From IMG/VR virus record IMGVR_UViG_3300032116_014939, positions 124,001 through 188,000 of that record: a DNA stretch of 64,000 nucleotides; one strand, written 5' to 3'. The position numbers and the translations under genes were made by a program. Positions 1,802 through 63,643 of this stretch are shown piece after piece (position 1 is the first letter of the stretch; each line of letters begins with the position of its first letter). The notes beneath the pieces were generated by a model. That model was given only the letters and a program-made list of their open reading frames with translations, was not told the origin of the DNA and did not search any database.

Positions 1802-2467
1802 TTAGAATTTCAAAGGTTTGTATTGTGTTTCTTCTCCGTAATCGTTAAAAGTTGTTTTAATTTCTGAAGGAGTGAAATCTTCAACTTCATCAGTTGTTAA
1901 AATATATTCATTTTTTCCTGATTTTTCAATATCTTCTTGTTTGTCAACAAAAAAATCAGTTAATTTTTGATTAAATGGCCCTGAGTCTAAACTTCTTAAT
2001 TCAAGTTTTTCTTGTGGAGTTTTTTCTCTGTATTTTTCAATCTTAGCCTCGATATCATTTAATTTAGTAAAAATATTTTCCATATTACTTAACTTACTTT
2101 CTAAATCAGTTAATTGATTAAATAAGTTATTAAAATATTCTTCTTGTTTTGTTTCAATATTTTGTTGTGATTTTACTAAATCAGTAATTTCTAATTCTTC
2201 AGTTTCAGAAGATTCCCCTTCATCACCTACTTTTTCAACATCAGGGTCATTTGCAACATCAATAGGTTGAGCATCCGCCGGTGGAGGTGTCACTCCCGCT
2301 TCAGGTGCCGGTGGTAAAGCTCCAGCGTCAGGTGCTGCAGGTGCCGCCAATGGGTCTTCACCAGGTACAGGTGGTAATCCCGCTTCTTGTTCGGTGATAT
2401 AATTATTAATCTTATTATATCTTTTTAATTCTTCCAAAATTGTTTCTGAAATTCCCATTTTAACCAT
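1802..2467 (-). CDS. Late hypothetical protein, Pro/Ala-rich linker plus coiled coil (possible head internal or scaffold protein)
   Basis: N-terminal ILEELKRYNKINNYITEQ; PPVPGEDPLAAPAAPDAGALPPAP tract; heptad region LFNQLTDLESKLSNMENIFTKLNDIEAKIEKY. Confidence 0.7.
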   Translation of the reverse strand: MVKMGISETILEELKRYNKINNYITEQEAGLPPVPGEDPLAAPAAPDAGALPPAPEAGVTPPPADAQPIDVANDPDVEKVGDEGESSETEELEITDLVKSQQNIETKQEEYFNNLFNQLTDLESKLSNMENIFTKLNDIEAKIEKYREKTPQEKLELRSLDSGPFNQKLTDFFVDKQEDIEKSGKNEYILTTDEVEDFTPSEIKTTFNDYGEETQYKPLKF

Positions 2468-2684
2468 TTAATAATTGTTTGAAACCTTGAGTTGTTTCTA
2501 CGTTTATTTTTTTATTAGTATTAAGAGTATTATTAACTCTCTCAATTAAACCATCTTTCATTCTGATTGTATAACAATCACCAGTATCTAAATCACACAC
2601 CTCTTTAAAACCATTTCCTTTGTCAGTTTCAGTAATTCTTGTACTCTTACCTAAGTATCTGTCTAAAATTTGTTTAGTGTTCAT
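2460..2684 (-). CDS. Hypothetical late protein
   Basis: 74 aa ORF directly downstream of a TATTTATA motif, coupled to the next gene; CDLDTGDC motif. Confidence 0.7.
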   Translation of the reverse strand: MNTKQILDRYLGKSTRITETDKGNGFKEVCDLDTGDCYTIRMKDGLIERVNNTLNTNKKINVETTQGFKQLLNG

Positions 2685-2697
2685 AATATTATTTTAT

Positions 2698-2705
2698 TAT
2701 AAATA
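2698..2705 (-). promoter_or_regulatory. Putative late promoter TATTTATA
   Basis: Motif recurs just upstream of most structural genes. Confidence 0.65.
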
Positions 2706-2721
2706 TTCGTCAATAATGAAA

Positions 2722-5700
2722 TTACTCACTAATAGGAATAATACTTTGGTAAATATCAAATCCTTTTTTAATTTTACTTAACAGTTTTTGATAATTTTCG
2801 TTATTGGTTTGTATATAGTCATTAAAAATTGTTGGAGTATTAACTACTTTATTATAAGGGAAATATTCTATCCAAAATTTTGAAAATTCATTTGCAAACG
2901 TATCTTTGTTTATTATATCATTTACGTTATTATTAATGTAATCAGGGTATGCCGCAATCATAAAATCATATAAACTGTTTTCTCTTTCAAAGACTGCATA
3001 TGTTTGTGTATATTGGCTGGTGTTAGTTAAACACATGAAATTTGAAGTAATATAGTTTTTAAGTTCACCATGGTAATCGTAATCTAATGTTACTCCCGCG
3101 ATATTATTACCAAAAAACTGCAAACGATTTGTTGTTTCATTTATAGATAATCCTGATTCAATCCAACAACTAATAAAAATACAAAGTCGAACTTTATCAG
3201 TTGTAGGCAATACTTTAATTGCCGAAACAATAACATCAACACCTTCATTTTTAGTAAGCCCTGTGTATTTTGTATAATTAGAGTAAGCTTCATCTTTATT
3301 ACAATTTGGGGTATTAGACATTATTTTACCACCAATTATAGAATTAGTTATACTATTTTTTATTTGTACAGAATTGTTTGGTATACCTGTAGTAGACCCA
3401 CCTTGATTTTTAAATGTACTACCTAAATTAGTTAATAATTGTTTTTTAATTGTTTGGAAAAGTGTATCCACTTTTGGTAATGTAGCAACCGCCTGTCTTG
3501 TACCCGTAAATGATGTTGTAAAATCATCTAATCCTATACTATGGTTCACTTCAGTAATAAAATAAGACCCTGCAAATAATGGTATATTTCTTAAAACAAA
3601 ATACATTGATGGTTGAATCATTACGTTACCCATTGATTCAACAGACGCAGCGTAACTTCTAGTTTTATAAATGTTATATAAACTAACACTTTGTGTTGAT
3701 GTTTGAATTCCAGCACTTGAGTTAGCTAAATTATACTCAGCCATTAAGGATTCACTTGTTGCCTTACCTAAATCCTGACTTACATTTATTTTTTTGAAAA
3801 CTCCTTGATTTTGTAATTCAAAGTCAACCGCAAAACCAACTATTCTATTTTCTAAAGAAAAGTTTCTTTTTTGAGACGCATCAACCCCAACAGAATTTTC
3901 AGCACATATTGTAATATCTAAACCATCATCTTTATATCCATTAAGTTTGGATTTGTTATCCGTTTGTTGTGAAGGTTTATCAACAAATATATTTAACATT
4001 TTTGGTTTTGAGCTTTGATAATCAACAGTATCAAATGTTCCAAATAAATTGTTCGCAAATTCATTTGGTTCAGTATTTTTTGAAGTATCATCCTGTCCAG
4101 TTGGAGTTTGTCTTCCATAAAAATTAATGTATGATGGCATTAAAAAACTAACAAAATTATGGTCTTTTATTATTGAACCGACAACTGTAAAAACGTTTGA
4201 TTTAAGATTTGCACCTTTTAAATACGAATTAACTTTTGTAATATCAACAAATATATCACCAACATTTCTATTTGCTCTGTCAACAAATAAATAATCTTTA
4301 AATAAAGGAGCGTCAGAGTTTTCATCAATTTTTGTATAATCATTTCCAGCAATCCATTTATCATTAATTGCTTTAAACATATCATATAATTCAACTTTAC
4401 TTTGAAACCCTTCTAAAACCGAATCAATTTTTTCAGTATTTGTATTACCACCACCTAATTTTTTTTGTAAAGATGTGATAAAATTTGTGAAAGTTTCACC
4501 CGATAAATTATCAGTAATATTTAAATAAGTGTCTATTTTATTTTTAAAAACATCAATATTTCCAGAATTACCCAAAATTGATGTTGTTCCATACATTTTA
4601 ATTAAATTTCTAAATAATTTAATATTATCAACTGTAAAACCTATATTGAAAACTCTAAAGAAGTTAGTTAAATAATTTTCAGAAGCGTCGTAGTTTAATC
4701 CATCAATTGTTGAAAATCCGACATAAAGTTCCATAGTATTCCACTCGTTTGGATATAGAGCCTTTGATTCACTATAAGTTATACCAAAGTTAGTCGGCAC
4801 TGAATTTGGCGTTATCTCATAGTTTGGGATATTATATCGATTTACTATTTCAGGAGACGGATTTGATGAGAGTATATTAAACAAATTTTTATCAAACCCA
4901 GTCGGATTTCCTCGTTTAATTAAAATATCGTATTGTAACGAGTTTGTTATTGTTGTACTAACATCATAACTTTGTGAAATGGCAATACTTTTAACAATTT
5001 CGTTATAGTTAACTCCAATAATATTCTCAGATTTTTCATTATAGAATGTTATTTTTTTAAGTATTGACTCAAAAGAATAAACACTTGAACTTCCCTGATT
5101 TGCAAATTTTAAAAATTCAATTTCAAAATTATTTAATTCTTCAGTATCAAAAACAGAAAATAATTCTTCAATGTTTGAATAAATAAATTCAGAAAATAAT
5201 TCAAAACTTACTTGTTCTTGTTTATCGGAATAAACTTTTTTAAGATATTCATTATAACTAGATTTTCTAATTGGTGTTGTATTAAAATACCCATAGTTAG
5301 GTGCTCCCCAAAATAACCTTACCGAACCGTTATGAATACTTGGATTGTTTGAAAGTGAGATTATGTTATTATTATTGCCGTCAAAACATTCTTTTTTAAT
5401 TTGATTAGTTGTTGTACCAAAAGAAGGACATATTGTATAAGACTCCTCACCTTCCGAATTACTAACTTTAATTAAAACAGTCCAAGTTTTTAAATTAATG
5501 TTTGAAGATTGGATATTTGATTGGTCAGCATTAAATAAAATAATTTCTCGGTTATCAAGTGCGGTTTGTAATGCGTTTTGTATATCTAATGAAGTTGTGA
5601 CTGAGTTTGGGTTATATAAATAAGAACCATTATGTAAAAAATAAAAATCATTTACCAGTTTTGGATAAAATCCAATATGATAATTTATTGATGATGTTTG

Positions 5701-13902: not shown

Positions 13903-13915
13903 CTATACTTTTTTC

Positions 13916-13923
13916 TATAAATA
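13916..13923 (-). promoter_or_regulatory. Putative late promoter TATTTATA
   Basis: 13 nt upstream of ATG 13902. Confidence 0.65.
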
Positions 13924-17568: not shown

Positions 17569-18384
17569 TTAATATAATTTCTTTTCTCCTCCATGTGTTG
17601 ATATTGTTTGAATAATATTTTCCGGGTCTTTTGATAATTCATCTTTAACTTTTTCTAAATTTCTTAAATCATCATCTGAAAAACCTATTTTAGGTATGAA
17701 TCTATTACTAATATCATCTTTAAACATTACAGGTTTCTTTAATAGATTTGCTAAATATTTTACATATTGTTGAAATTCTCTTAAAGCTTCAACCTTTCCT
17801 TTTTCAGGACTTTGAGCAGAACCGGCTCCAAATGTTACAGGATAATACTTATTCATATCCATATAAGCATTTATAAGTTCTTTGTCTGTCATATCTTCTT
17901 CACCGGCAAACTTTCTAAACTTTCTTAAATTTTTAACCAATTCTTTTTTAGATATTCCTCTAAAATTAGTTTCAATCATATTTTCAATTGCCCTACGTAA
18001 AGCCAATGGTGAATGTCCTCTTGCTGTAACTATTGAAAAAATTGAACCCCCATTAATCGCCTCAACAAAGTCATCCCATGCTGGGCCTTCTTTCGCCATC
18101 ATTGCATCAATAATGAACCTCTTATCCCCTTTGGTTCCAAAATTTCTGAATGGGTCGTCAGCAAATCCTACAACAGTTTTCTTTTTATATTCAAAAGGTT
18201 CAACCCCAACCTTTACACGATATTCCGCAAAGTCTTCAGTTGACATACCAACTTCTTCACCATCTTCTGTACGAAGTATTATTTGTGTCGGCATTGTAAG
18301 AATATTATCATCCCAATCAAATGCATAATATTTTAAATCGGGTGTGATTTCTTCATTAAATTCTTCTACTAAAAATATTTTCAT
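17569..18384 (-). CDS. HAD-superfamily phosphatase
   Basis: Motif I FDWDDN, motif II IVTARG, motif IV GFSDDD. Confidence 0.75.
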   Translation of the reverse strand: MKIFLVEEFNEEITPDLKYYAFDWDDNILTMPTQIILRTEDGEEVGMSTEDFAEYRVKVGVEPFEYKKKTVVGFADDPFRNFGTKGDKRFIIDAMMAKEGPAWDDFVEAINGGSIFSIVTARGHSPLALRRAIENMIETNFRGISKKELVKNLRKFRKFAGEEDMTDKELINAYMDMNKYYPVTFGAGSAQSPEKGKVEALREFQQYVKYLANLLKKPVMFKDDISNRFIPKIGFSDDDLRNLEKVKDELSKDPENIIQTISTHGGEKKLY

Positions 18385-18387: not shown

Positions 18388-18395
18388 TATAAATA
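18388..18395 (-). promoter_or_regulatory. Putative late promoter TATTTATA
   Basis: 3 nt upstream of HAD gene ATG. Confidence 0.6.
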
Positions 18396-25296: not shown

Positions 25297-25304
25297 TATT
25301 TATA
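25297..25304 (+). promoter_or_regulatory. Putative late promoter TATTTATA
   Basis: 4 nt upstream of SOD ATG. Confidence 0.65.
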
Positions 25305-25308: not shown

Positions 25309-26814
25309 ATGAAATCGTTAAATTTAGTATCAGAGTCATTAGTTAGTCGTATATTAGGTGAGGAAACTCAACCTGAAACCAAATTCTTTATTAACGAAAT
25401 GAAAACCATAGGTATTGATAAATTACCTTACGGTTACGCATCATTAAGAAGATTTATTGACCCTGAAACAATGAAGTTTCATTATCAGAAACATTACAAA
25501 GGGTATGTTAAAAAATTAAATTCAGCTCTTCGTAAAAAAGATTATGGGGATGTTGAATTAGAAAACATTGTTAAACAAATTTCAAAGTATAATACAACAA
25601 TAAGAAACAACGCAGGTGGAGCATTTAATCACGCATTGTTTTGGAAGATGTTATCACCAACCCCACAAAAACCAAGTGGTGAAGTGTTTGAAAAGATTGT
25701 TAAACAATTTGGAACATATCGTAACTTCAAAACTAAATTTGAAGAAATCTCAAGAAAAAGATTTGGTTCAGGATGGTGTTGGTTAGTATTAACCGATACT
25801 GGTAGATTAAAAGTTATGTCGACTTCAAATCAGGATAATCCACTTATGAACATAATAAACAAGGGTGGTTTTCCGTTGTTAGGTTTAGATTTGTGGGAAC
25901 ACGCTTATTATTTAAAATACCAAAACAAAAGAGACGAATATATTGAAAATTTTTGGGACGTAATTAATTGGGAATTTGTTAACGAGTTATACAAATCAAA
26001 AACTGAAAAAAAATTGAACGAATCAATTTCACCAAAAAAACTTTTATACGAAAACGTATCTGATTATTCAGATATTTTTAGTAACAACAAAAATGTTCTT
26101 TGGACTTATAGAAGATGTATTGACAATACACTGAAAAGAGTTTTATCTGATAAATGGTATGAAAACAATCAACACTCTGAAGGTTCATCTTCAGGTATTT
26201 ACGATTTAGAAGCTCCTGGTCGTTCAGTAATTAATAAATTAAATACAAACTATATTGGGTTTAAAATTTTAGTTGATGATTTAAATGTGGTACTTACAAA
26301 ATTAAATAAACCCACATTAAATTTTATTGGGGTAACACCTTCACAACAAGTAGAAGAAATAAACAAATTTTGTGAGTATTTGGGTTTTTTTGGTGAAAGA
26401 ATTTTTAAAGGGTCTAAAACTCTTGATAAAATTATGAAACTTTTAAAAAGAACACATGACAAAGGTGGTCAACTTGAAGAGTATGTTGCAAAAAAAATCA
26501 ATCAAGAATTTGGTGAAGGAACTGCTACTGTAGTAGGTAGTTTAGGTTCAAAAGAAGATTTTGCAGGAACTGATTTAACAGTAAATTTTGATAACAAAAT
26601 ACAAAACGCTCAAGTAAAACCAATTTTAAGTATGGAAGTAATTGAAGGTTTCTATCATATCAAAATCAAAGGGTTTGTTAAAAAATTCAATACCGACTTG
26701 TTAATTTTCTCAAATCTTAATAAAGAAGTTTACATTTTTAAAAACAAAACTGTTGCTTTTAGTTCAAGTATGTTTAAAATTCCAACACAAGATTTAATTT
26801 ATACTCTGAATTGA
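25309..26814 (+). CDS. sod: Fe/Mn superoxide dismutase fused to a C-terminal PD-(D/E)XK-like domain
   Basis: FHYQKHYKGYV, NNAGGAFNHALFW, FGSGWCWL, NQDNP, DLWEHAYY; C-terminal EDFAGTDL...AQVK. Confidence 0.85.
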   Translation: MKSLNLVSESLVSRILGEETQPETKFFINEMKTIGIDKLPYGYASLRRFIDPETMKFHYQKHYKGYVKKLNSALRKKDYGDVELENIVKQISKYNTTIRNNAGGAFNHALFWKMLSPTPQKPSGEVFEKIVKQFGTYRNFKTKFEEISRKRFGSGWCWLVLTDTGRLKVMSTSNQDNPLMNIINKGGFPLLGLDLWEHAYYLKYQNKRDEYIENFWDVINWEFVNELYKSKTEKKLNESISPKKLLYENVSDYSDIFSNNKNVLWTYRRCIDNTLKRVLSDKWYENNQHSEGSSSGIYDLEAPGRSVINKLNTNYIGFKILVDDLNVVLTKLNKPTLNFIGVTPSQQVEEINKFCEYLGFFGERIFKGSKTLDKIMKLLKRTHDKGGQLEEYVAKKINQEFGEGTATVVGSLGSKEDFAGTDLTVNFDNKIQNAQVKPILSMEVIEGFYHIKIKGFVKKFNTDLLIFSNLNKEVYIFKNKTVAFSSSMFKIPTQDLIYTLN

Positions 26815-34125: not shown

Positions 34126-34153
34126 GATAAATAGTTAAATCCAAGTATTTATA
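34126..34153. promoter_or_regulatory. Back-to-back divergent late promoters
   Basis: TATTTATC on minus (34126-34133) and TATTTATA on plus (34146-34153) in a 47-nt intergenic gap. Confidence 0.65.
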
Positions 34154-34166: not shown

Positions 34167-35036
34167 ATGGAATTTAATAAAGAATATTTTAGTTCACCAT
34201 ATTACTTCTATATCAAAGAGGGGAAGCAAGATATTTCTGTATATTTTAGTGTTTCTAATACATTAACTGAAGCCAGAAAAAAAGATGAAGTTGTTAAATT
34301 CGACAAGAAAGATAAAAAAGAGGTTGAAAAAACAATTTCAAAAATTCAAAAAGAAAAAAAATTAAAAAATAATTCTGACGTTAAAAAAACTTTAAATAAG
34401 AAAAAAGACGAATTAGAAGAATTAGTTGATTATGATGGAAGTTTTTTAAGTTCTAAAATTCCAATTTTTAATCCTTATCTTTCACCAAAGAGTACAATGG
34501 ACCAGGAGGTTGTTGCAACAAGACAAACAAACAATCCTGTTACTCGTGGATATCGTGTATATTGGGGTGAGGGTGAGGAAGAAACTGACGAGGTAATTAA
34601 TGAAACTGACTTTTCAGATGCATTTGGATATGAAGAAACAAAAGACAAAAATGGCCCTGAAACTTTCAAAACATTTGTTAAAGAGTTAGGTTTAGATAAA
34701 GAAGAGGCGGCTGAAAGAACAAGACAACAAGGTAAAGAACCTGACGCTAAAAAACATAGACAAAAATTAGAAAGAGTTCCCAAAAAAATTAAAAAACAAA
34801 AAGGTTTTATTGATAGAATGACTATTTCTGAAAAAGAAAATTTGGAAGAAGAGAAAAAAGAAATGATGAAAAAAATGGTTGAAGATATAGTTCTTAAGAA
34901 AAAATCAGGTGACAAAGAAATGGGTAAGAAAAGTGGGTTGAGTAAAGTCCTTATGAAAAATTTAGAAAATATTAAAAAATTGGCCGACAAAGAAGGTATT
35001 GAAATAAATGACTTGGTTAAAATACTTAAGAAATGA
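34167..35036 (+). CDS. Highly charged late hypothetical protein
   Basis: K/E-rich ORF downstream of the late motif. Confidence 0.8.
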   Translation: MEFNKEYFSSPYYFYIKEGKQDISVYFSVSNTLTEARKKDEVVKFDKKDKKEVEKTISKIQKEKKLKNNSDVKKTLNKKKDELEELVDYDGSFLSSKIPIFNPYLSPKSTMDQEVVATRQTNNPVTRGYRVYWGEGEEETDEVINETDFSDAFGYEETKDKNGPETFKTFVKELGLDKEEAAERTRQQGKEPDAKKHRQKLERVPKKIKKQKGFIDRMTISEKENLEEEKKEMMKKMVEDIVLKKKSGDKEMGKKSGLSKVLMKNLENIKKLADKEGIEINDLVKILKK

Positions 35037-35449
35037 ATAGTGAAATGTATGGAAATACATACGAGGTTCCTCACAACGTATTATCGTCTTTAGAAAATTT
35101 TAAAGACGAAAAAACTATTCATAATATTTTTACAAATGGATTTTTAACATATCAAAATATGAAGAAAATACTTCATGATATTGATAATGGTAAATTTGGT
35201 AATAAAGATTTAAGTACTTTAAAATCATTTATAACACAAAATTTAGATTCAGATAGAGGAAGTATTAAGAGACAAAAAAGAGATGCTTCGGATTCAGGAA
35301 TGCAAAACCAATATTTATCAACACATAGAAAAGATAATGTTAGGGATTTAAACAGACCTTCTAAAAGTCATCACTCTATTTATGAAGATTACAATAAAGA
35401 AGTTGTAGATAATTTAAAAAGAATAAACGAAATAATGAAAAAATTATAA
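35033..35449 (+). CDS. Hypothetical late protein
   Basis: Coupled ORF (ATGA overlap); ends NLKRINEIMKKL. Confidence 0.75.
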   Translation: MNSEMYGNTYEVPHNVLSSLENFKDEKTIHNIFTNGFLTYQNMKKILHDIDNGKFGNKDLSTLKSFITQNLDSDRGSIKRQKRDASDSGMQNQYLSTHRKDNVRDLNRPSKSHHSIYEDYNKEVVDNLKRINEIMKKL

Positions 35450-35453: not shown

Positions 35454-35747
35454 ATGGCATCAAAAGTTCCAATAGATTTAAACCAACCAGATAATACTTT
35501 AAGTGCTATTGCCGAAAAAGTTAGAAAAGACTTGGTTACAAGAAATGATTATAAATCAAATGCTAATGAATATGGTGTAACTAATCCTGACGCTATCTCT
35601 GATGGTGACGGTAAAGGAAGAGGAACAGGAGTATTTTTAGATATATTTAATGGTGGTACATCTACAGACCAAGTTACTAAAGTTGATAATATTAAACTAA
35701 ACAAATACAGTTCAAAAAATCCTTATAATTCACCTTCAACAGAATGA
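35454..35747 (+). CDS. Hypothetical late protein
   Basis: Coupled ORF; DAISDGDGKGRGTG motif. Confidence 0.75.
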   Translation: MASKVPIDLNQPDNTLSAIAEKVRKDLVTRNDYKSNANEYGVTNPDAISDGDGKGRGTGVFLDIFNGGTSTDQVTKVDNIKLNKYSSKNPYNSPSTE

Positions 35748-36136
35748 AGCTTTACAACGTCATAAAACAACTTATTTTTGAAGCAAGTAGTGAAGAAATT
35801 ACTAATGCAATAAAAAATAGAAATGTTGCAATAATTTACTATGACGGAGAAGATAACGGTGGTAAGGGACTTCGTGTTATTGAACCTTTTTGTTACGGAA
35901 CATCAAAAAGAGGTAACAAAGTAATAAGAGCATGGGAAAGAGAAGGTGCTTCACACACCGCAACAATAGGTGACCAACCATTACCAGGTTGGAGATTATT
36001 TAGGGTGGATAGAATTGGAAGCTTTTCATCTGACCCACGTGAAAAATTTGATGTAATAAGACCAAATTACAATCCTGAAGATAAAGGAATGGTCGGATTA
36101 AGAGTATGTACAAAATTTGAATTAGAAAATGAATGA
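35744..36136 (+). CDS. Stand-alone WYL-like domain protein
   Basis: IIYY...RVIEPFCYG...VIRAW...GWRLFRVDRI. Confidence 0.7.
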   Translation: MKLYNVIKQLIFEASSEEITNAIKNRNVAIIYYDGEDNGGKGLRVIEPFCYGTSKRGNKVIRAWEREGASHTATIGDQPLPGWRLFRVDRIGSFSSDPREKFDVIRPNYNPEDKGMVGLRVCTKFELENE

Positions 36137-36701
36137 TTTAATGCAAAAACTAATGTTGTCTAAAGAAATTATGAATAGACACGACGAAATGGACAAGGGA
36201 AGTTCATCTAAAAGGTCATCATCAACTCAACAATTAGTTAGAGAATATGATGAGGCTCCTATACCCGCAACTTATAATATACCACAAGAATTTTTAGCAC
36301 AAGAACAACCAAAAGCAGTTGCCCCAAAAGTTATGACAGAAGATAGAATAAAAAATTCTAAACTACCTGACGCAATCAAAAGATTGATGATGGAACACCC
36401 AATAGACCAACCACAACAATATCAGGCAACAATTTCAGATGATGTTATTGAAAAAGCCGCAAGACTAATGGGTAATAACAAAACCCAAGTTGCAGAATCA
36501 AAAAAACAAGAACCATCATACACATCTAACGGATTATCTGCGTCGGATATTAAAAAAATTGTAAGGGAAACGGTTGAAGAAGTTTTAAGTGAAAATGGAC
36601 TTCTTGTTGAGTCTTCTCAAAAATCAAATGAAATTATGACTATCAAAGTAGGTAAACACATTTTTGAAGGTAAAATTTCAAAAGTTAAAAAAGTTCAATA
36701 A
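36129..36701 (+). CDS. Hypothetical late protein
   Basis: DIKKIVRETVEEVL segment; last gene before the terminator. Confidence 0.75.
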   Translation: MNDLMQKLMLSKEIMNRHDEMDKGSSSKRSSSTQQLVREYDEAPIPATYNIPQEFLAQEQPKAVAPKVMTEDRIKNSKLPDAIKRLMMEHPIDQPQQYQATISDDVIEKAARLMGNNKTQVAESKKQEPSYTSNGLSASDIKKIVRETVEEVLSENGLLVESSQKSNEIMTIKVGKHIFEGKISKVKKVQ

Positions 36702-52024: not shown

Positions 52025-52049
52025 AAAAAATAAAAAAAGTAAAAAAATT

Positions 52050-52874: not shown

Positions 52875-52877
52875 ATA

Positions 52878-54457: not shown

Positions 54458-54460
54458 AAC

Positions 54461-55519: not shown

Positions 55520-55523
55520 TATT

Positions 55524-56330
55524 ATGGAAAATATTTTAGATTTAAGTGTTATATTACCTATTAAAAGTATGGTAATGAGAGATTTTGAGGATTTCTTTAA
55601 AAAATCAATTGAGTCTGTACAATCTCAAGAGTTCTTACCAAAAAACTTAATTATAGTTCATGGTAAAGATAAAAATTTATCGGATTATTTGAAAAAATAT
55701 GATTTTCAAAATCTTAAAGTAACAACTTTTGAATTTGATGGAGAACCAAATTTTTCAAATCAGGTTAATTTTGGAATTACAAAAGCTGAAACTAAATGGG
55801 TTAGTATTCTAGAAGTTGACGATGAATACTCAAAAATTTGGTTTAAAAATGTAAAAAAATATTTAGATTCATATTCTGATGTTGACGCATTTTTACCTAT
55901 CGTAGTTGAGGTAGATAATAAATTAACCTTCCAAGGATTTACAAACGAAGCTACATTTGCGGCTAATTTCTCACAAGAAATGGGATATCTAACAAATGAA
56001 ACTTTATTACAATATCAAAATTTTCAAACATCAGGAATGGTATTCAAAAAATCTCTAATTGAAGATTTTGGTGGATTTAAACCAAGCATTAAATTAACAT
56101 TTGTTTATGAATTGTTACTTCGTTTAACGTACAATTCGGCTAAAATTATGACTATTCCTAAAATTGGTTACAAACACACTAATTTAAGAGAAGGTTCTAT
56201 TTTTTGGGAATACAAAAATGGTGAAACCAAACTTGAAGAAAATGAGGTTAAGTTTTGGGTATCTTCAGCTAAAAAAGAATATTTTTTTAGTGAAGACAGA
56301 AACATAAAATTTGTTCCTGAAAATGCTTAA
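55524..56330 (+). CDS. GT2 glycosyltransferase
   Basis: LSVILP, QVNFGI, ILEVDDEY, GGFKPS, YKHTN. Confidence 0.8.
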   Translation: MENILDLSVILPIKSMVMRDFEDFFKKSIESVQSQEFLPKNLIIVHGKDKNLSDYLKKYDFQNLKVTTFEFDGEPNFSNQVNFGITKAETKWVSILEVDDEYSKIWFKNVKKYLDSYSDVDAFLPIVVEVDNKLTFQGFTNEATFAANFSQEMGYLTNETLLQYQNFQTSGMVFKKSLIEDFGGFKPSIKLTFVYELLLRLTYNSAKIMTIPKIGYKHTNLREGSIFWEYKNGETKLEENEVKFWVSSAKKEYFFSEDRNIKFVPENA

Positions 56331-57067
56331 TGATATTAAGCGCCAGCTCAATAGAAATTGCCGTTAAGACGAAAAAAAAATCTAGCGGTGAAAATTACTT
56401 TGACATAAGAGAAGAGAATGCGGTCAGAATGTTTCTGACTGCTTCTACTTTTGAAGAAAAAAATAAGATTTATAATGAATATTTAAGACATCCTTTAGAT
56501 AAAATGATTTCTTCAATTATTCGTAGATATAAATTATACAGAAAAGATATGGATTTTATTGAAATTCATACTGATACACATTCATTTTTGATGACAAAAA
56601 TTGACAAATTTAGTCCATCAAAAGAAAAGAAAGCTTATTCATATTTTGGAACTATTTGCAAGAATTATCTTATGGGTCAAATATTAAAAGACCAAAAAGA
56701 ACAAAATAGAAAAATTTCCTATGAAGATATATCAGGTGATTTAGAAAATTCTCCTGAAATGGTTTATTACTTAGATGTTGAACCATCTGAAGAAGTTAAT
56801 TTAATACCAATATTAATTGATTATATTAAAGAAACTATTGAAATTGATGATTTAAACGAAAGTGAAATAAAATTAGGTATTTCATTAGTTGAGATTATGG
56901 AAAATTATGAGACAATTTTTCCAGCAACTGATAACAATAAATTTAATAAAAATATTATTTTATTATCGCTCAGAGAGATGACAAATATGTCAACAAAAGA
57001 AATAAGAGCGTCAATGAAAAAGTTCAAAAAAATATATACTGCTCTACTCCAAGTTAATCCTGAATAA
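56330..57067 (+). CDS. Phage RNA polymerase sigma factor (T4 gp55-like late sigma candidate)
   Basis: Sigma region 2-like KIDKFSPSKEKKAYSYFGTICKNYL; NYF...E.A N-terminus. Confidence 0.7.
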   Translation: MILSASSIEIAVKTKKKSSGENYFDIREENAVRMFLTASTFEEKNKIYNEYLRHPLDKMISSIIRRYKLYRKDMDFIEIHTDTHSFLMTKIDKFSPSKEKKAYSYFGTICKNYLMGQILKDQKEQNRKISYEDISGDLENSPEMVYYLDVEPSEEVNLIPILIDYIKETIEIDDLNESEIKLGISLVEIMENYETIFPATDNNKFNKNIILLSLREMTNMSTKEIRASMKKFKKIYTALLQVNPE

Positions 57068-57083
57068 AAAATGTCATAAAAAA

Positions 57084-57091
57084 TATTTATA
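57084..57091 (+). promoter_or_regulatory. Putative late promoter TATTTATA
   Basis: 3 nt upstream of ATG 57095. Confidence 0.65.
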
Positions 57092-57094
57092 AGT

Positions 57095-59379: not shown

Positions 59380-59380
59380 T

Positions 59381-59575
59381 ATGTCAGAAAAAATAAAAGA
59401 AATATTAGTTGAATATAAAACTAAATCAAACAAAGATTTGGTATTAGCAATGGATTTTTTATCAAAAGAATTTGATAATACCAAACATTTAGTTATTGAA
59501 TTAACAAAAAAAATTGATAAAATAGAATCAACATATAACAAAATTTTAAAAGAATATGAGTCAAGGAAGGGATGA
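59381..59575 (+). CDS. Small coiled-coil protein
   Basis: Heptad pattern LSKEFDNTKHLVIELTKKIDKIESTYNKIL. Confidence 0.65.
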   Translation: MSEKIKEILVEYKTKSNKDLVLAMDFLSKEFDNTKHLVIELTKKIDKIESTYNKILKEYESRKG

Positions 59576-61145
59576 CCAACAAAAACATAGGATATTATTT
59601 GGAGGTACTGTTACCCATAATGAAGACAAATATTCATTAGAACGTATTAGAGTTAAACCTGATTTTGAAATTTACCAACAAGTAATTGATTCACTTAAAG
59701 ATATTACAAAAAATGGTAAATCAGTTTTAAATGCTCAAGGTAATGATATTTTAGAAGAATTTTTTTACGAAGATGTCGACCCTTTTGTTTATATTCCTTT
59801 AATTCCTGTTCAATTAAATATTGTTCCTGAAAATAATGATTATGTTCATTTAATTTATTATAATTGGTCTGAAAATACAGGAAGAAAAAATCAATTTTAT
59901 ATTAAAGGCCCGATATCATCAGCAATGTCTGTTGCTCGTGAAAATTCAAACCAAACAAAAAGTATTATGGCGGCAGGGCCTAATGTTAAACCAGGTTTAC
60001 CATTAAAAAATTCAAATGGATACTTTTTTGAAAACACTAAAGGGGTATTTGCTGAACCAAAAGATTATGGAATTTATTCTAAAGGAAGGTCTGATATTAT
60101 TTTAAAAGATAATGAAGTTTTATTAAGGTCAAAAAAAACACCAATATTAAAAACAAATGAATACCCTGTAACGAATCCTAAAAGGTCTTTTTTACAATTA
60201 TCTAATTTTGATTCTAAAACAACCAAAGGGACACAAAAAACAATTACTCAAAATTCAACAGTATCTGAACAAATTGTTAAACTTGTTGAGTATGAAATTT
60301 ATTATGGATTGGATACTGAAGGCCCATTTTCAGGTAACATTAACATATATAATTTACCCGGAAAGTCCCCAAATACTTTAACAGATAGATTTACACAACA
60401 AACAGTTATTGACGATGTTACATATACGTATTTTTCACATTCTTTTAATAACATTGATACTCTACAAGAAGTATCTGATATAATTAATAAAGTGATATCA
60501 GGATTAAATGACGGACTAATTAATATTGATTACTTAACGCCAAGAGAAACTGTAAATGTTACAGATGTTAGATTTCCATTTTTCTTTAGACCATCATTAT
60601 CTTTACAAAAAAAATCACTAATTGGTAGTGACCTCGAAAAGAAAAATACAAATACTTTAATTTCATTAATAGCATTTCCGAAATCACAGAAATTAACAAA
60701 CCCTGGTTCAGGATTAATTTCAAGTAAAAATAAATACGGATTAAAAAAGGTTTCAAAGAAAGTAAAATACACTCCTAATGTAAGTCAAAACGGTGATTTT
60801 GGTTACGCAGTAATGGGGTCTGAAAAAATATTTTTAATATCTAACAATTCAAATATTCCAGGATTAGAAAAAATCCAATTAAAAAATTCAGATGTTTATG
60901 GTATTAATGAACCTACTTTATCAGGAAATTATTATAATTCAACAAACTCTATGGTTAGAGGAGAATCGTTAAAAGATTTATTGGCATTAATTGTGAGATT
61001 TTTATTAAATCATCAACACCTATATCATAGAGAAACTCCATTTGAATTAACAAGGGAAACTTCTCCAATATCTAAGACAAAATTAACATCTGAATGGAAA
61101 TTATTCGATACTAAAGTATTAAATCAAAATATTCGTATAAATTGA
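59556..61145 (+). CDS. Baseplate central spike-like protein (gp5/VgrG OB-fold N-terminus)
   Basis: GTVTHNEDKYSLERIRVK...PLIP..LNIVP...YVHLIY; GRSDIILKDNEVLLRS. Confidence 0.55.
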   Translation: MSQGRDDQQKHRILFGGTVTHNEDKYSLERIRVKPDFEIYQQVIDSLKDITKNGKSVLNAQGNDILEEFFYEDVDPFVYIPLIPVQLNIVPENNDYVHLIYYNWSENTGRKNQFYIKGPISSAMSVARENSNQTKSIMAAGPNVKPGLPLKNSNGYFFENTKGVFAEPKDYGIYSKGRSDIILKDNEVLLRSKKTPILKTNEYPVTNPKRSFLQLSNFDSKTTKGTQKTITQNSTVSEQIVKLVEYEIYYGLDTEGPFSGNINIYNLPGKSPNTLTDRFTQQTVIDDVTYTYFSHSFNNIDTLQEVSDIINKVISGLNDGLINIDYLTPRETVNVTDVRFPFFFRPSLSLQKKSLIGSDLEKKNTNTLISLIAFPKSQKLTNPGSGLISSKNKYGLKKVSKKVKYTPNVSQNGDFGYAVMGSEKIFLISNNSNIPGLEKIQLKNSDVYGINEPTLSGNYYNSTNSMVRGESLKDLLALIVRFLLNHQHLYHRETPFELTRETSPISKTKLTSEWKLFDTKVLNQNIRIN

Positions 61146-61153
61146 TATTTATC
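61146..61153 (+). promoter_or_regulatory. Putative late promoter TATTTATC
   Basis: 12 nt upstream of ATG 61166. Confidence 0.6.
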
Positions 61154-61165
61154 TAAAAAGAGTAA

Positions 61166-62671
61166 ATGTCAATACATCGTTCATATTTTAGTAGGAACAA
61201 TACAATAATTTCAAATAGTTTTACCAACACTGGTAAATCACCTTATACGCAATTATATTTTGGTTCAGCATCTGATGTAATTGCGTCCCCTGGATTTAGT
61301 AGATTTATCTTTGATTTAGATTTATCATTACTTGTACAAAAAATCCAAGACGGAATAATATCAACAGGATGTACAGGTTTTTCAGGTATCACTCATACAT
61401 TAAAAATGACCAACACATCTTCTTTTGATAAAGATGGGTTAAGTAATGAATACACATCACAAGGAAGATTAAGAGCAACATCATTTGACTTAGTTTTATT
61501 TAGAATACCTCTTACTTCAGGTAATACAGGAACTGCTCAAACGTGGGATGAAGGTGTTGGATATGATTACTATGATGTTCAACGTACTTTAAATTCAACT
61601 AATGGTTTATTATCACCAATAGCTTTACCACAAGATAAAGCATATTCTCAAAGACCTTCTAATTGGTATCAAACAACAACATTAGATAATTGGTCAACAC
61701 CCGGAATATACAATAATACAAACACAGGAACAGGGTCAACAATTAATTATTCGGCGTTAACAATTGTTGATACTCAACATTTTGAATTTGGGAATGAAGA
61801 TATTGAGTTTGATATGACAAATGAAATCAATCGAATTCTTACCGGTACAACAACTGGGTCAACAGGATGGGGAGTTGCTTTTTTACCCGAATTAGAAAAT
61901 TTAACAGGTTTAACTGAAAACTATTCAGTAGGATTTTTTACAAGGCATACCCAAACTTTCTACGAACCATTTCTTGAAACAAATTATAACGATTTAATAC
62001 TTGATAATCGAAACGCTTTTTATTCTTACAACAATAATAAATTATACTTGTATTCTTACATAGGTGGTGTACCAACAAATTTGGATAATTTACCGATTGT
62101 TACCTTAGAAAATAATCAAGGTAACACTATTGGTACTTATACGGGGTGTCAAATTACTCAAGGTGTTTATGAAATAACAACTAATTCTGTTTCAGCAACA
62201 ACACCTTGTATGTTTACAGATACTTGGTCAAATCTTTATTATAACGGTATACAAATACCTAATGTAGTTAATGATTTAACTGTTTTACCATACACTGGTT
62301 ATTTTACTCTTGGGCCTAATAGTCAAGACCCTGAACTTTTTGGTTTTGATTTTTACGGTATTAAACAAGATGAAAAAATATTAAATACTGATTTAAGAAA
62401 AGTTGGTGTTGTTGTTAAAAAAGCGTACACATCTAATCAAGTATTAACACCTGTAACTGTTTATTACCGAGTTTATGTTAAAGAGGGTCAAACAGAAGTA
62501 CAAGTTCAAGATTGGACACAAGTAAACAGAGCGTCAAATGAATATTATTTCATCTTTGATACAAGAGATAAAATACCTAATGAATATTCAATAGATATTA
62601 AAGTACTTACATCAGGTGAAGTAGATACTTATAAGAAAACACTAACATTCCAAATAGTTGATAAGAAATGA
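61166..62671 (+). CDS. Putative virion structural protein, beta-rich and Thr/Gly-rich
   Basis: SRFIFDLDL, TWDEGVG, FFTRHT; seven [ST]GxT motifs. Confidence 0.65.
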   Translation: MSIHRSYFSRNNTIISNSFTNTGKSPYTQLYFGSASDVIASPGFSRFIFDLDLSLLVQKIQDGIISTGCTGFSGITHTLKMTNTSSFDKDGLSNEYTSQGRLRATSFDLVLFRIPLTSGNTGTAQTWDEGVGYDYYDVQRTLNSTNGLLSPIALPQDKAYSQRPSNWYQTTTLDNWSTPGIYNNTNTGTGSTINYSALTIVDTQHFEFGNEDIEFDMTNEINRILTGTTTGSTGWGVAFLPELENLTGLTENYSVGFFTRHTQTFYEPFLETNYNDLILDNRNAFYSYNNNKLYLYSYIGGVPTNLDNLPIVTLENNQGNTIGTYTGCQITQGVYEITTNSVSATTPCMFTDTWSNLYYNGIQIPNVVNDLTVLPYTGYFTLGPNSQDPELFGFDFYGIKQDEKILNTDLRKVGVVVKKAYTSNQVLTPVTVYYRVYVKEGQTEVQVQDWTQVNRASNEYYFIFDTRDKIPNEYSIDIKVLTSGEVDTYKKTLTFQIVDKK

Positions 62672-63186
62672 AAAAAATAAAATTAAAAGAAAACGAATAT
62701 ATTAAATTATTAAAATTTGTTTTATCCGAAGCCTTTACTCCTGGTGAAGATAAAATTGACGCAATTTTAGATAAAATTAGTCAATCAGGTATGGAATCAA
62801 TTACACCTGAAGAAAGAAAAACTCTTGAGAAATTTACTAAAGGTATTTCAATTGAAGACGAACCGTCATCTAAAGAAGATGCTATAACAAAGGCAGGTGG
62901 TTTTTGGTCTTTTGAATTTCCAGGAATGCCATCGTTTAAATTTAGATATGAGTCAACTGAAGATAATGAGGATGAAAAAATACATACAGGGTATCTAACT
63001 GTTGATGATAGTGACTATTATGGTGAAATTTATTGTGACCCCGAAGGTAATTTTCAAACTTGTATGTTTGAAAACACAACTGAAGGAACAAATGTATTTG
63101 AAGATTATGAAGGTTTAGAACATGATATTGAAGTGTTTTTAGATGTAGTCTGTAATGACCTAAAAGAAGATGATATGATAGCTTAA
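62668..63186 (+). CDS. Late protein with a DUF6576-like helical segment
   Basis: DKIDAILDKISQSGMESITPEERKTL after the leader MKKIKLKENEYIKLLKFVLSEA. Confidence 0.65.
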   Translation: MKKIKLKENEYIKLLKFVLSEAFTPGEDKIDAILDKISQSGMESITPEERKTLEKFTKGISIEDEPSSKEDAITKAGGFWSFEFPGMPSFKFRYESTEDNEDEKIHTGYLTVDDSDYYGEIYCDPEGNFQTCMFENTTEGTNVFEDYEGLEHDIEVFLDVVCNDLKEDDMIA

Positions 63187-63187
63187 T

Positions 63188-63643
63188 ATGAAAAACTTAG
63201 ACAATTTAATTAAACAAGTATTAAAAGAACAAAATGAAAGATATATGTTTTTCAGTAATTTAGAACAAATGCACCGTCAATGTGAGATACTTTTATCTAT
63301 ACCTAAAGATGACGTTGAAAATATTTTAAACAATGGTCACGATTGGGCTCAAGACCACATTGCCGAATCTAAAAATAACTTAGACCAAGTATTTGATTTT
63401 ATGATGAATGAAATCAAAGGTGATAAGTTTAGTTCTGATGATGCAGTTAAACCTCAAGAAGATATCATGATGGAAGGTCGTAAAAAAGCAGGTACTAAAC
63501 TTTGTGCACGTGGTAAATCGGCAGCTAAAGCTAAATTTGATGTTTACCCTTCAGCATATGCTAATGGTTATGCGGTACAGGTATGTAAAGGTACAAAACC
63601 TGGTTTAGACGGAAAAAAACACTGTTCAGGGGCTTATTGTTAA
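63188..63643 (+). CDS. Two-domain late hypothetical protein with a basic C-terminal module
   Basis: Leader MKNLDNLIKQVLKEQ; C-terminal LCARGKSAAKAKFDVYPSAYANGYAVQVCKG. Confidence 0.75.
   Translation: MKNLDNLIKQVLKEQNERYMFFSNLEQMHRQCEILLSIPKDDVENILNNGHDWAQDHIAESKNNLDQVFDFMMNEIKGDKFSSDDAVKPQEDIMMEGRKKAGTKLCARGKSAAKAKFDVYPSAYANGYAVQVCKGTKPGLDGKKHCSGAYC

What the first reader, a model, noticed from the sequence alone, without database searches (positions are those of the whole stretch)
1802..63643. Shared Glu-terminated leader on unrelated late proteins: candidate capsid-packaging and protease-maturation signal
Seen: short amphipathic K/I/L-rich segments ending in a hydrophobic-x-E pattern start or subdivide many unrelated proteins: ILEELKRYNKINNYITEQ (1802), MKIFLVEEFNEE (HAD), MKSLNLVSESLVSRILGEE and internal KKLNES..LLYE (SOD), LTEA (34167), NLKRINEI (35033), MKLYNVIKQLIFEA (WYL), IKKIVRETVEEVLSE (36129), MKKIKLKENEYIKLLKFVLSEA (62668), MKNLDNLIKQVLKEQ and IMMEG (63188). 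All lie in TATTTAT-driven units; replication and sugar genes lack such leaders. Established: T4 gp21 cleaves after Glu in (L/I)-x-E and removes capsid-targeting leaders from internal proteins; phiKZ gp175 also cleaves after Glu. Inference: a modular tag that loads enzymes and effectors into the head for ejection into the host.
Basis: partly seen in the sequence, partly recalled or inferred. Interest (0 to 1): 0.75.

Follow-up and report, generated by a model that had tools for sequence, protein, structure and literature searches.

The report
Glu-ended leader tags in jumbo phage

Summary

A specific signal does exist. Window ORFs 62668 and 63188 belong to a 22-residue leader family, MKKIIRLTESDLtRIVkRVI-x-E. 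It heads 8-13 unrelated proteins in this genome and 8,276 protein clusters in metagenomes. It was found in no Pfam or PHROG model and no cultured phage.

An unbiased N-terminus comparison links 209 proteins in six related genomes, about 10% of genes, into sub-families with Phi-x-Glu motifs.

Eighteen of 20 large contigs carrying the leader encode a T4 gp21-type (S77) head protease. Leader genes carry the same TATTTAT promoter motif as structural genes (59% against 24%).

In the SOD fusion, conserved L/I-x-E motifs lie in the two disordered linkers flanking the SOD fold.

ORF 1802, the HAD-like protein and ORF 36129 are plausible further cases. The WYL-like protein and ORF 34167 are ambiguous, and ORF 35033 is rejected.

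Best reading (confidence about 0.55): T4-CTS-like packaging and cleavage tags, used on a far larger scale than in T4. No virion data exist.

The parts
62668..63186 (+). 172-aa leader-bearing protein. The leader is residues 1-21 (62668-62730, MKKIKLKENEYIKLLKFVLSE), followed by a cargo with a DUF6576 match.
   Evidence: The leader HMM gives 9 bits (E 0.12). The G006 orthologue carries the canonical leader MKKVVRLTESELINVIQRIIKE. It is a member of the 209-protein N-terminus network. Pfam DUF6576 matches residues 29-58.
63188..63643 (+). 151-aa leader-bearing protein. It has a short leader at residues 1-14 (63188-63229, ...VLKE|Q) and a conserved internal [VI]-M-x-E|G site at residues 93-97 (63464-63478) after an acidic, gappy linker.
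   Evidence: Orthologues in G008 and G011 carry the full canonical leader. Of 118 homologues, 72 score 12 bits or more to the leader HMM and 5 have the full form; the internal site is kept in nearly all. The AF2 model puts residues 87-113 below pLDDT 50.
25309..26814 (+). 501-aa SOD polyprotein-like fusion. Leader: residues 1-30 (25309-25398, ...F-I-N-E30|M). Fe/Mn SOD fold: residues 31-233 (25399-26007). Linker: residues 234-251 (26008-26061) with L-N-E238|S and L-Y-E248|N. C-terminal domain: residues 252-501 (26062-26811), helical part plus a PD-(D/E)xK-like fold.
   Evidence: Pfam Sod_Fe_N and Sod_Fe_C match. In 119 homologues only E30, the catalytic-site E197 and E248 are Phi-x-E conserved at 90% or more; E238 is 93% Glu. 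AF2 gives pLDDT below 50 at residues 1-6, 8-11, 13-15, 17-36, 78-82 and 234-251, so the leader and the linker are both low. The fold search matches Fe-SOD at Z 24 over residues 33-230 and Hjc or restriction-endonuclease folds at Z 5-7.7 over residues 383-501.
2390..2467 (-). N-terminal helix, residues 1-26, of the 221-aa ORF 1802-2467. It ends Y-I-T-E26|Q and is followed by a Pro/Ala/Asp-rich low-complexity linker. Candidate propeptide.
   Evidence: All six orthologues keep ...YI[TVL]EQ and then diverge into low complexity. It is not a member of the leader network. No family match.
18349..18384 (-). N-terminal extension, residues 1-12, of the HAD-like protein (ORF 17569-18384), lying before the DxD motif. 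Candidate short propeptide.
   Evidence: The six orthologues have extensions that vary in length and sequence before the conserved KYYAFDWDDN, and each contains Phi-x-E. HAD-like identity is only a lead, from atlas features; there is no Pfam or PDB hit.
36546..36593 (+). Internal leader-like helix DIKKIVRETVEEVLSE|NG, residues 140-155 of ORF 36129-36701. It sits after a gappy linker and before a conserved 35-aa C-terminal segment.
   Evidence: V-L-x-E|[NK]G is conserved in five orthologues, and the preceding segment is indel-rich.
35744..35782 (+). N-terminus MKLYNVIKQLIFE of the WYL-like 130-aa protein. Ambiguous.
   Evidence: L-I-x-E is kept in five orthologues, but conservation continues on both sides, so there is no boundary signature. 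The WYL match is below the Pfam cut-off.
34260..34271 (+). T-L-T-E, residues 32-35 of ORF 34167-35036. Ambiguous.
   Evidence: [LI]-[TS]-E-[AS] is kept in four orthologues, inside a conserved non-helical N-terminal region.
35420..35434 (+). R-I-N-E-I of ORF 35033-35449. Rejected as a leader.
   Evidence: It lies at residues 130-134 of 138, the C-terminal end.
25297..25303 (+). TATTTAT promoter-like motif 12 nt upstream of the SOD start. Equivalent sites: 34146-34152 (+), 61146-61152 (+), 18389-18395 (-), 2699-2705 (-).
   Evidence: Coordinates are. The motif is 12x enriched in the 60 nt upstream of genes and sits in two registers, -11..-14 and -19..-25. It also lies upstream of the sheath, tube, baseplate, scaffold, protease and terminase genes.

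Best explanation
The window belongs to a 242-kb uncultivated T4-like jumbo myovirus from fresh water. It is probably of the recently named 'moraphage' lineage that infects Bacteroidota.

This phage and its relatives use short N-terminal amphipathic helices as modular tags on many unrelated, mostly small and unannotated proteins. The main type is the 22-residue MKKIIRLTESDLtRIVkRVI-x-E. Sister types are MK[IY]IITESQ.., MNLQExIRRILREE and ..EEKxRILxMH....[LI]-x-E.

Proposed mechanism, by analogy with the T4 capsid targeting sequence:
1. The tagged proteins are made late, from the same TATTTAT promoters as the structural genes.
2. The helix docks them to the scaffolding core inside the assembling prohead.
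3. The gp21-type S77 protease cuts after the Glu of the terminal (I/L)-x-E. This releases the mature cargo inside the head, ready for ejection with the DNA.

Multi-domain proteins are processed the same way at (I/L)-x-E sites in their linkers. These include the SOD fusion, ORF 63188, and metagenomic proteins that carry a second, internal leader.

Shown here: the existence, modularity, position, spread and motif structure of the leaders; the presence of the protease; the shared promoter motif; and the placement of conserved sites in disordered linkers.

Inferred, not shown: docking, cleavage, packaging and ejection.
For: 1. Modularity. Eight strong leaders in this genome all start at Met1 and head unrelated proteins. 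Metagenome proteins share the leader and nothing else. There are 8,276 cluster representatives at E<=1e-3, nearly all matching at residue 1, and at least 448 stretches in IMG/VR.

2. Selection acts on the protein. Codons differ synonymously between copies.

3. Motif. In 133 leaders, I20 is 94%, position 21 is variable, E22 is 99% with no Asp, and nothing is conserved after Q23. This equals the L/I-X-E specificity of T4 gp21 (PMC9026906). Every sub-family of the 209-protein network carries one or two Phi-x-E motifs at 68-98% occupancy.

4. Protease. An S77 match at 9e-28; similarity to T4 gp21 (5JBL) at 4e-18 with the His and Ser kept. It is present in 18 of 20 large leader-bearing contigs. One exception is a truncated near-copy of a positive genome, by coordinate arithmetic.

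5. Bona fide head substrates behave as expected. The capsid protein's 60-residue propeptide ends L-I-N-E|A and holds 5 of the protein's 10 [LIV]xE motifs. The core-position protein g194750 has [LIV]xE at z=3.3. The head-module protein g199305 has a variable leader, canonical-like in G005 and G009, followed by invariant Phi-x-E|APIDY.GPER.

6. Expression. TATTTAT lies within 60 nt upstream of 59% of leader genes against 24% of other genes (p 2e-23, all six genomes). The same motif precedes structural genes.

7. SOD. Conserved sites at E30 and E248 (and E238) flank the fold and lie in segments with pLDDT below 50. The canonical fold spans residues 33-230. The sites persist when the neighbouring domains differ.

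8. Internal leader copies have a Phi-x-E within 12 aa upstream in 25 of 45 cases, against 28% in control windows (p 9e-5). This is what excision of the module would predict.
Against: - There is no virion proteome, N-terminal sequence or cultured relative. Tblastn of the leader against 50,697 phage records found nothing, and PHROGs has no model for it.
- The leader has no sequence similarity to the T4 CTS MKTYQEFIAE.
- P1' is mostly Gln, Asn or Ser, not the Ala seen in T4 IPs and in this phage's own capsid protein.
- About a third of the top metagenomic hits have an internal copy without Met, which is unlike T4.
- Many B-type leaders have only an early I-T-E at residues 5-7 and no terminal Glu.
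- Cargo pI is no more basic than that of other small proteins.
- The protease-leader complex prediction gave no answer.
- Phi-x-E as such is not enriched genome-wide.
- 'Late' timing is inferred from promoter sharing only. The gp55-like sigma hit is weak (E 0.003).
Confidence: 0.55

Rival explanations
1. The leader is a docking or oligomerisation helix that stays on the mature protein. It would bind some shared partner other than the prohead core, for example the phage-encoded ClpA-like ATPase or DnaJ/K chaperones, a host target, or DNA. The terminal Glu would be part of the binding surface, not a cleavage site.
For: - Strict conservation of many surface positions, including E9, S10, D11, R14, K17 and R18, suggests a specific interface.
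- Internal copies without Met exist.
- The genome encodes a Clp-type ATPase and a DnaJ-like protein (N-termini), and the moraphage core set lists ClpA.
- In the AF2 model of ORF 63188 the leader is continuous with the first helix.
Against: - It does not explain why unrelated leader sub-families all carry Phi-x-E.
- It does not explain why P2 is the variable position between invariant I and E, with no Asp.
- It does not explain why conservation stops right after the Glu.
- It does not explain why the same motif marks the capsid propeptide end and the SOD linkers, or why a second Phi-x-E tends to precede internal copies.
Confidence: 0.2
2. Compositional coincidence. In a 32% GC genome rich in K, I, L, E and N, amphipathic N-termini with hydrophobic-x-Glu arise by chance. 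On this view most of the reader's nine examples are unrelated and unprocessed.
For: - 50% of shuffled N-termini carry the motif, and 56% of sugar-island genes do.
- There is no excess of conserved Phi-x-E over Phi-x-K.
- The SOD leader is unrelated to the main family by hhalign (probability 1.5%).
- The 35033 item is at a C-terminus.
Against: It cannot account for:
- the leader family itself, with 57-85 hits against 0-2 in controls and 8,276 clusters;
- orthologues of 62668 and 63188 carrying the canonical leader;
- invariant E30 and E248 at the SOD domain borders in 119 homologues.
It remains a fair description of the WYL, 34167 and 35033 items.
Confidence: 0.15
3. The conserved 5' ends are DNA- or RNA-level cassettes (promoter plus start region) kept for recombinational gene shuffling or for translation initiation, and the peptide has no function of its own.
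For: - Leader genes are stand-alone cassettes with a TATTTAT motif and terminator hairpins, 16 found against 3.7 expected.
- They cluster in a variable region at both contig ends, like the T4 IP loci.
Against: - The copies differ at synonymous sites while the peptide is kept.
- Internal, promoter-less copies keep the peptide.
- Amino-acid conservation holds across genomes whose SOD orthologues share only 45-67% identity with the window protein.
Confidence: 0.03

Closest known systems
T4 capsid targeting sequence (CTS) of internal proteins IPI, IPII, IPIII and Alt, removed by the gp21 prohead protease
   Same: - Short N-terminal peptide on otherwise unrelated proteins.
- Begins M-K and ends (I/L)-x-E.
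- The genome encodes a gp21-type S77 protease.
- Cargo genes are small, diverse and lie in variable regions.
- The capsid protein has a propeptide ending L-x-E|A.
   Different: - No sequence similarity (leader HMM scores are negative on the T4 IPs).
- 22 residues rather than 10-19.
- 20-46 tagged genes per genome (about 10% of genes) rather than about 4.
- Several sister leader types.
- Internal copies and polyprotein-like arrays.
- Cargo includes enzymes (SOD fusion).
- P1' is mostly Gln, Asn or Ser.
- Function is untested.
Propeptides of phiKZ, 201phi2-1 and SPN3US head and ejection proteins, cut by gp175/gp245 proteases
   Same: - Jumbo phages in which many head proteins are processed after Glu.
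- Redundant sites in linkers.
- Paralogues share identical N-termini, as in SPN3US gp53 and gp54 (PMC5694885; PMC9026906).
   Different: - Their motif is S/A-x-E or A-x-E; here P3 is I, L, V or M.
- Their propeptides are mostly over 100 residues.
- This phage has a T4-like head gene set including a scaffold-position protein.
- No proteomics here.
Encapsulin cargo-loading peptides (comparison from my own knowledge, not tested here)
   Same: Short terminal peptides that load diverse enzymes, often oxidative-stress enzymes, into an HK97-fold shell.
   Different: They are usually C-terminal, are not cleaved, have a different sequence and belong to cellular nanocompartments. This is a functional analogy only.
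'Moraphages', large aquatic Bacteroidota phages (PMC12619734)
   Same: - 200-307 kb, freshwater.
- T4-like core including the prohead core protease, gp13, gp6/gp25, SSB and ClpA.
- This genome is 242 kb, found in lake and freshwater runs, and has Clp-like and DnaJ-like genes and Bacteroidota-type signal peptides.
   Different: Membership was not tested phylogenetically. A term search of the paper found no mention of 'N-terminal' or 'superoxide'.

Membership tests
T4-type CTS / gp21-cleaved propeptide system | Genome encodes an S77 (gp21-type) prohead protease with the catalytic His and Ser | tested here: met
   PF03420 matches at 9e-28 at G000 193421-193855. Similarity to 5JBL at 4e-18, with NHP and SRG kept. 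Present in 18 of 20 leader-bearing large contigs.
T4-type CTS / gp21-cleaved propeptide system | Short peptide at the extreme N-terminus of the precursor | tested here: met
   Nearly all of the 150 best of 8,276 hits match at residue 1. 57-85 N-terminal hits against 0-2 internal or shuffled hits. Caveat: 45 of the top 147 proteins also have an internal copy.
T4-type CTS / gp21-cleaved propeptide system | Ends in the protease motif (L/I)-x-E | tested here: met
   I20 94%, x21 variable, E22 99%. Phi-x-E is conserved in every sub-family. Some B-type leaders have only I-T-E at residues 5-7.
T4-type CTS / gp21-cleaved propeptide system | Attached to mutually unrelated cargo proteins | tested here: met
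   95 of 100 cargos have no Pfam hit.
T4-type CTS / gp21-cleaved propeptide system | Sequence homology to the T4 CTS (MKTYQEFIAE) | tested here: not met
   T4 ipI, ipII and ipIII were fetched and scored with the leader HMMs; all scores were negative.
T4-type CTS / gp21-cleaved propeptide system | Co-expression with head genes (late) | tested here: inconclusive
   The TATTTAT motif is shared with structural genes and enriched on leader genes, but there are no timing data. RNA-labelled runs gave no start sites.
T4-type CTS / gp21-cleaved propeptide system | Cargo present in virions with the leader removed; leader sufficient for packaging | not testable with these tools
   No cultured relative. 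The complex prediction gave no answer.
phiKZ-like head protease substrates | Cleavage motif S/A-x-E | tested here: not met
   P3 is I, L, V, M or F at the leader end, the capsid propeptide end and the SOD borders.
Fe/Mn superoxide dismutase (ORF 25309-26814) | Both Pfam domains, the metal ligands and the fold | tested here: met
   Sod_Fe_N at 2e-23 and Sod_Fe_C at 7e-42. H58, H108, D194 and H198 are invariant in 61 sequences; their assignment as the metal ligands is from my own knowledge. Z 24 to Fe-SOD 3tqj over residues 33-230.
Sec-type signal peptide | Hydrophobic core after a basic N-terminus | tested here: not met
   The leader is charged throughout. True signal peptides (MKKLILSL..FSQ) form separate N-terminus clusters.

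The most novel reading that the evidence does not exclude
A sequence-readable 'packaging code'. In a widespread clade of freshwater jumbo T4-like phages, a family of Glu-terminated leader helices marks 20-46 proteins per genome, about 10% of genes and over 8,000 protein clusters in metagenomes, for loading into the capsid and release by the S77 protease. Polyprotein arrays and enzymes such as an Fe/Mn SOD fused to a nuclease-fold domain are included. If so, the whole set of ejected proteins of uncultivated phages could be read from sequence, and the tag could be reused to package foreign proteins.
Probability: 0.4. Interest if true: 0.85.

Novelty: new variant of a known kind. Interest (0 to 1): 0.7.

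Why it matters
T4 packages about four proteins through a 10-residue tag, and those proteins are anti-defence weapons.

If the leaders found here work the same way, a whole lineage of uncultivated jumbo phages delivers dozens of proteins per infection. Most have unknown function, and some are enzymes, including a superoxide dismutase. All of them are recognisable from a 22-residue signature that is in no protein-family library searched here.

That would give three things:
- a direct, sequence-only way to list candidate ejected and anti-defence proteins in metagenomes;
- a testable case of polyprotein processing in a T4-type head;
- a new packaging tag for phage engineering.

Even if the capsid reading is wrong, a module shared by more than 8,000 otherwise unrelated protein clusters still needs an explanation.

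Tried and rejected
1. Rejected: near chance, and present in the sugar genes.

2. ORF 35033 'NLKRINEI' as a leader. Rejected: it is C-terminal.

3. SOD leader as a member of the main leader family. Rejected by hhalign, probability 1.5%; it is a separate, poorly conserved 30-residue segment.

4. Homology of the leader to the T4 CTS. Rejected.

5. Protease plus leader complex prediction. No answer; not evidence either way.

6. Basic cargo, as for the DNA-binding T4 IPs. Not seen.

7. Pfam and PHROGs on 100 cargos. Almost nothing: one GNAT, one peptidoglycan-binding domain, two or three endolysin-like proteins.

8. Search of cultured phages and prokaryote genomes for the leader. None among phages.

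9. Sequencing runs. The phage is in lake and freshwater DNA runs. RNA-labelled runs held only relatives' contigs, with no start sites.

10. Rfam on the window. Nothing found.

12. Other genetic codes. No sign of recoding; all genes read in table 11.

Full report
**What the window is**

The 64-kb window is bases 124001-188000 of a 242,064-bp IMG/VR viral contig, 32% GC, with a CheckV completeness of 82%. It is a distant T4-like myovirus.
- The tail sheath is about 30% identical to cyanophage and Microcystis-phage sheaths, and there is no near match among 50,697 phage records.
- The window holds a UvsX-like recombinase, a gp32-like SSB, a baseplate hub, a tail tube, a sheath, a helicase, a DNA polymerase, a neck/adaptor-like protein, a 20-kb sugar-gene island, and many proteins without a family.
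- Just to the right of the window lies a T4-type head module: large terminase, portal, a core-position protein, an S77 prohead protease, an acidic scaffold-position protein, and a gp23-type major capsid protein.
- The protease matches T4 gp21 (PDB 5JBL) at E 4e-18, with the catalytic His and Ser motifs kept.
- The phage occurs in lake and freshwater metagenomes. It fits the description of the recently named 'moraphages' of Bacteroidota (PMC12619734). That is a lead, not a tested placement.

**Checking the observation**

- A hydrophobic-x-Glu triplet occurs in residues 2-30 of 59% of all genes. Composition-matched shuffles give 50% (sd 3%).
- In the window, the sugar-island genes have it in 56% of cases, and the remaining window genes in 43%.
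- Over 129 orthologue groups from six genomes, invariant Phi-x-E in the first 40 residues (37 columns) is no commoner than invariant Phi-x-K (37) or E-x-Phi (34).

So the statement that "replication and sugar genes lack such leaders" fails for the loose motif.

The promoter statement holds. TATTTAT is 8-13 times enriched in the 60 nt upstream of genes and sits in two registers, -11..-14 and -19..-25 from the ATG. It precedes each unit that holds a listed protein. It also precedes the sheath, tube, baseplate, scaffold, protease and terminase genes. It is absent from the sugar island.

**The real signal**

- Eight proteins at 222-242 kb begin MKK[IV][IV]RLTE[SN][DE]L..[IL][IV]K[KR]V[IV].E. A profile built from them finds these eight at 38-51 bits in a six-frame scan, each starting at the Met, with window ORF 62668 next.
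- The proteins behind the leader are unrelated, apart from one pair of paralogues.
- The copies differ at synonymous codon positions, so selection acts on the peptide.
- Metagenome proteins share the same 22 residues and nothing else.
- A profile search of 1.84 billion cluster representatives gives 8,276 proteins at E<=1e-3, and nearly all of the 150 best match at residue 1.
- IMG/VR holds at least 448 confirmed stretches.
- Eleven jumbo genomes of 240-322 kb carry 7-17 copies each.
- No Pfam or PHROG model covers the leader, and 95 of 100 cargos have no Pfam domain.
- No cultured phage has it. A limited pattern search of prokaryote genomes found only one 3-kb MAG contig.

**An unbiased test**

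I fetched five whole relatives. I then compared the first 40 residues of all proteins with each other, discarding pairs that are also similar downstream.
- One connected component of 209 proteins emerged: 21 in this genome and 30-46 in each of the others, about 10% of genes.
- It splits into sub-families:
  - A: MKKIIRLTESDLtRIVkRVI.Eq
  - B: MK[IY]IITESQ..
  - C: MNLqE.IrrILrEe
  - D: MKkliItEEEKnRIl.mH..a.....l.Eq
- Separate small groups have ...MGDVKPLI.E and ...LLLMKYdskkTLtEN.
- In every sub-family, Phi-x-E motifs are conserved at 68-98% occupancy, at positions 7; 5 and 13; 9 and 22; 9 and 29; or 21.
- In 133 metagenomic A-type leaders, I20 is 94%, position 21 is free, E22 is 99% (never Asp), Q23 is 57%, and nothing is conserved after that.

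This is the L/I-X-E specificity described for T4 gp21 (PMC9026906). It recurs in leaders of different sequence.

**Link to the head machinery**

- Eighteen of 20 large leader-bearing contigs encode the S77 protease. One of the two exceptions is a truncated near-copy of a positive genome, in which the gene would lie beyond the contig end.
- The capsid protein's first 60 residues are almost invariant in the clade and end L-I-N-E|A. They hold five of the protein's ten [LIV]xE motifs.
- The protein in the gp67/68 position has twice the expected density of such motifs, z = 3.3.
- A conserved 431-aa protein of the head module has a leader of variable length, canonical-like in two genomes, followed by invariant Phi-x-E|APIDY.GPER.
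- Leader genes carry TATTTAT within 60 nt in 59% of cases, against 24% for other genes (p 2e-23). The difference holds in all six genomes.
- Leader genes are shorter (median 159 against 204 aa). They sit as terminator-bounded cassettes in a variable region at both contig ends.

- ORF 62668 is a member. Its G006 orthologue has the canonical leader.
- ORF 63188 is a member with a shortened leader. Orthologues in G008 and G011 and five metagenomic homologues have the full form, and 72 of 118 homologues score 12 bits or more. Its 'IMMEG' is a conserved [VI]-M-x-E|G after an acidic, gappy linker, in a segment of low model confidence.
- SOD (501 aa) has an active-looking Fe/Mn SOD at residues 31-233.
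  - Pfam matches both halves. H58, H108, D194 and H198 are invariant; their assignment as the metal ligands is from my own knowledge. The fold matches Fe-SOD at Z 24.
  - Its 30-residue N-terminal segment is poorly conserved and unrelated to the main leader. It ends in [FL]-[IL]-x-E30|[MA]K, with E 100% and I/L 100% in 119 homologues.
  - The linker after the fold has [LI]-N-E238|S (E 93%) and [IVL]-[LI]-x-E248 (E 99%).
  - Over the whole 501 columns, the only other Phi-x-E conserved at 90% or more is in the active-site region, LWEH.
  - AlphaFold2 gives pLDDT below 50 across the leader (residues 1-36), at a short loop (78-82) and across the linker (234-251).
  - In relatives the same sites persist although the SOD is instead fused to an N-terminal HExxH domain, or to other C-terminal domains, or the protein ends there.
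  - The C-terminal part has a PD-(D/E)xK-like fold at residues 383-501. The fold matches Hjc and restriction enzymes at Z 5-7.7, and D422, Q435 and K437 are invariant. This is moderate support.
- ORF 1802 has a conserved 26-residue helix ending Y-I-x-E|Q, followed by a Pro/Ala/Asp-rich linker. Plausible.
- The HAD-like protein has an N-terminal extension of variable length and sequence before the conserved KYYAFDWDDN in six orthologues, each containing Phi-x-E. Plausible; its identity is only a lead.
- ORF 36129 has an internal helix resembling the second half of the leader, ending V-L-x-E|NG after an indel-rich linker. Plausible.
- The WYL-like protein and ORF 34167 have a conserved motif but no boundary signature. 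Ambiguous.
- ORF 35033: the motif is at the C-terminus. Rejected.

**Interpretation**

The closest known system is the T4 capsid targeting sequence. It is a 10-19-residue N-terminal peptide (MKTYQEFIAE|A on IPII and IPIII...ITE|A on IPI). It docks otherwise unrelated internal proteins to the scaffolding core and is removed by gp21 (PMC3012670; PMC9026906).

The layout here is the same in these respects: an M-K start, a short helix, a terminal I/L-x-E, diverse small cargo, variable loci, and the same protease family.

It differs in these respects:
- no sequence similarity to the T4 CTS;
- a tenfold larger repertoire;
- several leader types;
- enzymes among the cargo;
- frequent internal copies. 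Forty-five of the 147 best metagenomic proteins have a second copy, mostly without Met. A further Phi-x-E lies within 12 residues upstream in 25 of the 45, against 28% in control windows (p 9e-5). This suggests polyproteins from which the module is excised.

Giant phiKZ-like phages also process many head proteins after Glu, but at S/A-x-E and with long propeptides. That motif is not met here.

I therefore file this as working like a T4 CTS, without being a sequence member of it. My confidence is about 0.55, because packaging and cleavage themselves are untested.

**Rivals**

- A retained docking helix for another partner, such as the phage Clp-like ATPase. Confidence 0.2.
- Compositional coincidence. 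This fits the WYL, 34167 and 35033 items but not the family. Confidence 0.15.
- A nucleotide-level cassette. Contradicted by the synonymous variation and by the internal copies. Confidence 0.03.

**What failed or gave nothing**

- The protease-leader complex prediction gave no answer.
- Cargo is not unusually basic.
- RNA-labelled runs held only relatives' contigs.
- Rfam found nothing in the window.

**Verdict**

The finding is a new variant of a known kind. It is interesting because it would make the packaged-protein set of an uncultivated phage lineage readable from sequence.

Noticed in passing
window 25297-25303, 18389-18395 (-), and genome-wide: TATTTAT sits in two preferred registers. 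The -11..-14 register leaves almost no 5' UTR, which suggests leaderless or near-leaderless late mRNAs.
   Followed up: partly
window 26062-26811 (SOD fusion residues 252-501): The C-terminal domain of the SOD fusion is a helical region plus a PD-(D/E)xK-like fold, with invariant D422, Q435 and K437. Relatives instead fuse SOD to an N-terminal HExxH metallopeptidase-like domain, or end after SOD.
   Followed up: partly
window 36793-57067: A 20-kb island of glycosyltransferase, sugar-nucleotide and methyltransferase-like genes, plus a 3'-5' exonuclease and a dUTPase. All are on the + strand and the island has no TATTTAT motif.
   Followed up: no
window 56330-57067: A weak match (E 0.003) to the gp55-like late sigma factor family phrog_234.
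   Followed up: no
window 31648-31947: Tandem 30-nt (and 18/60-nt) repeats inside the 974-aa ORF 31195-34119.
   Followed up: no
G000 775-3956 (L006): An array of 14 tRNA genes at the left end of the contig.
   Followed up: yes
G000 227409-229196 (L004:7409-9196): A 595-aa fusion of polyphosphate kinase 2 and a phage-lysozyme domain, with its own Glu-containing N-terminal segment (...IMGLTE|A).
   Followed up: no
G000 59022, 66679, 97773 and relatives: A second shared N-terminal module, 'P.T.ITI...G.SPFDVYVCD', on 15 proteins including very large ones (71 to 1,481 aa).
   Followed up: no
G000 27303, 42166, 222084 and relatives: Several phage proteins carry signal peptides of the MKKLILSL...FSQ type. 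From my own knowledge this looks Bacteroidota-like, which would point to the host phylum.
   Followed up: no
L004:10000-20000 (G000 230-240 kb): Terminator-like hairpins are four times more frequent than in shuffles (16 against 3.7). Each small leader gene is its own promoter-terminator cassette.
   Followed up: partly
metagenome proteins P0024-P0066: Proteins with two leader copies, [leader-cargo]x2 in one reading frame. The internal copies mostly lack the initial MKK.
   Followed up: partly
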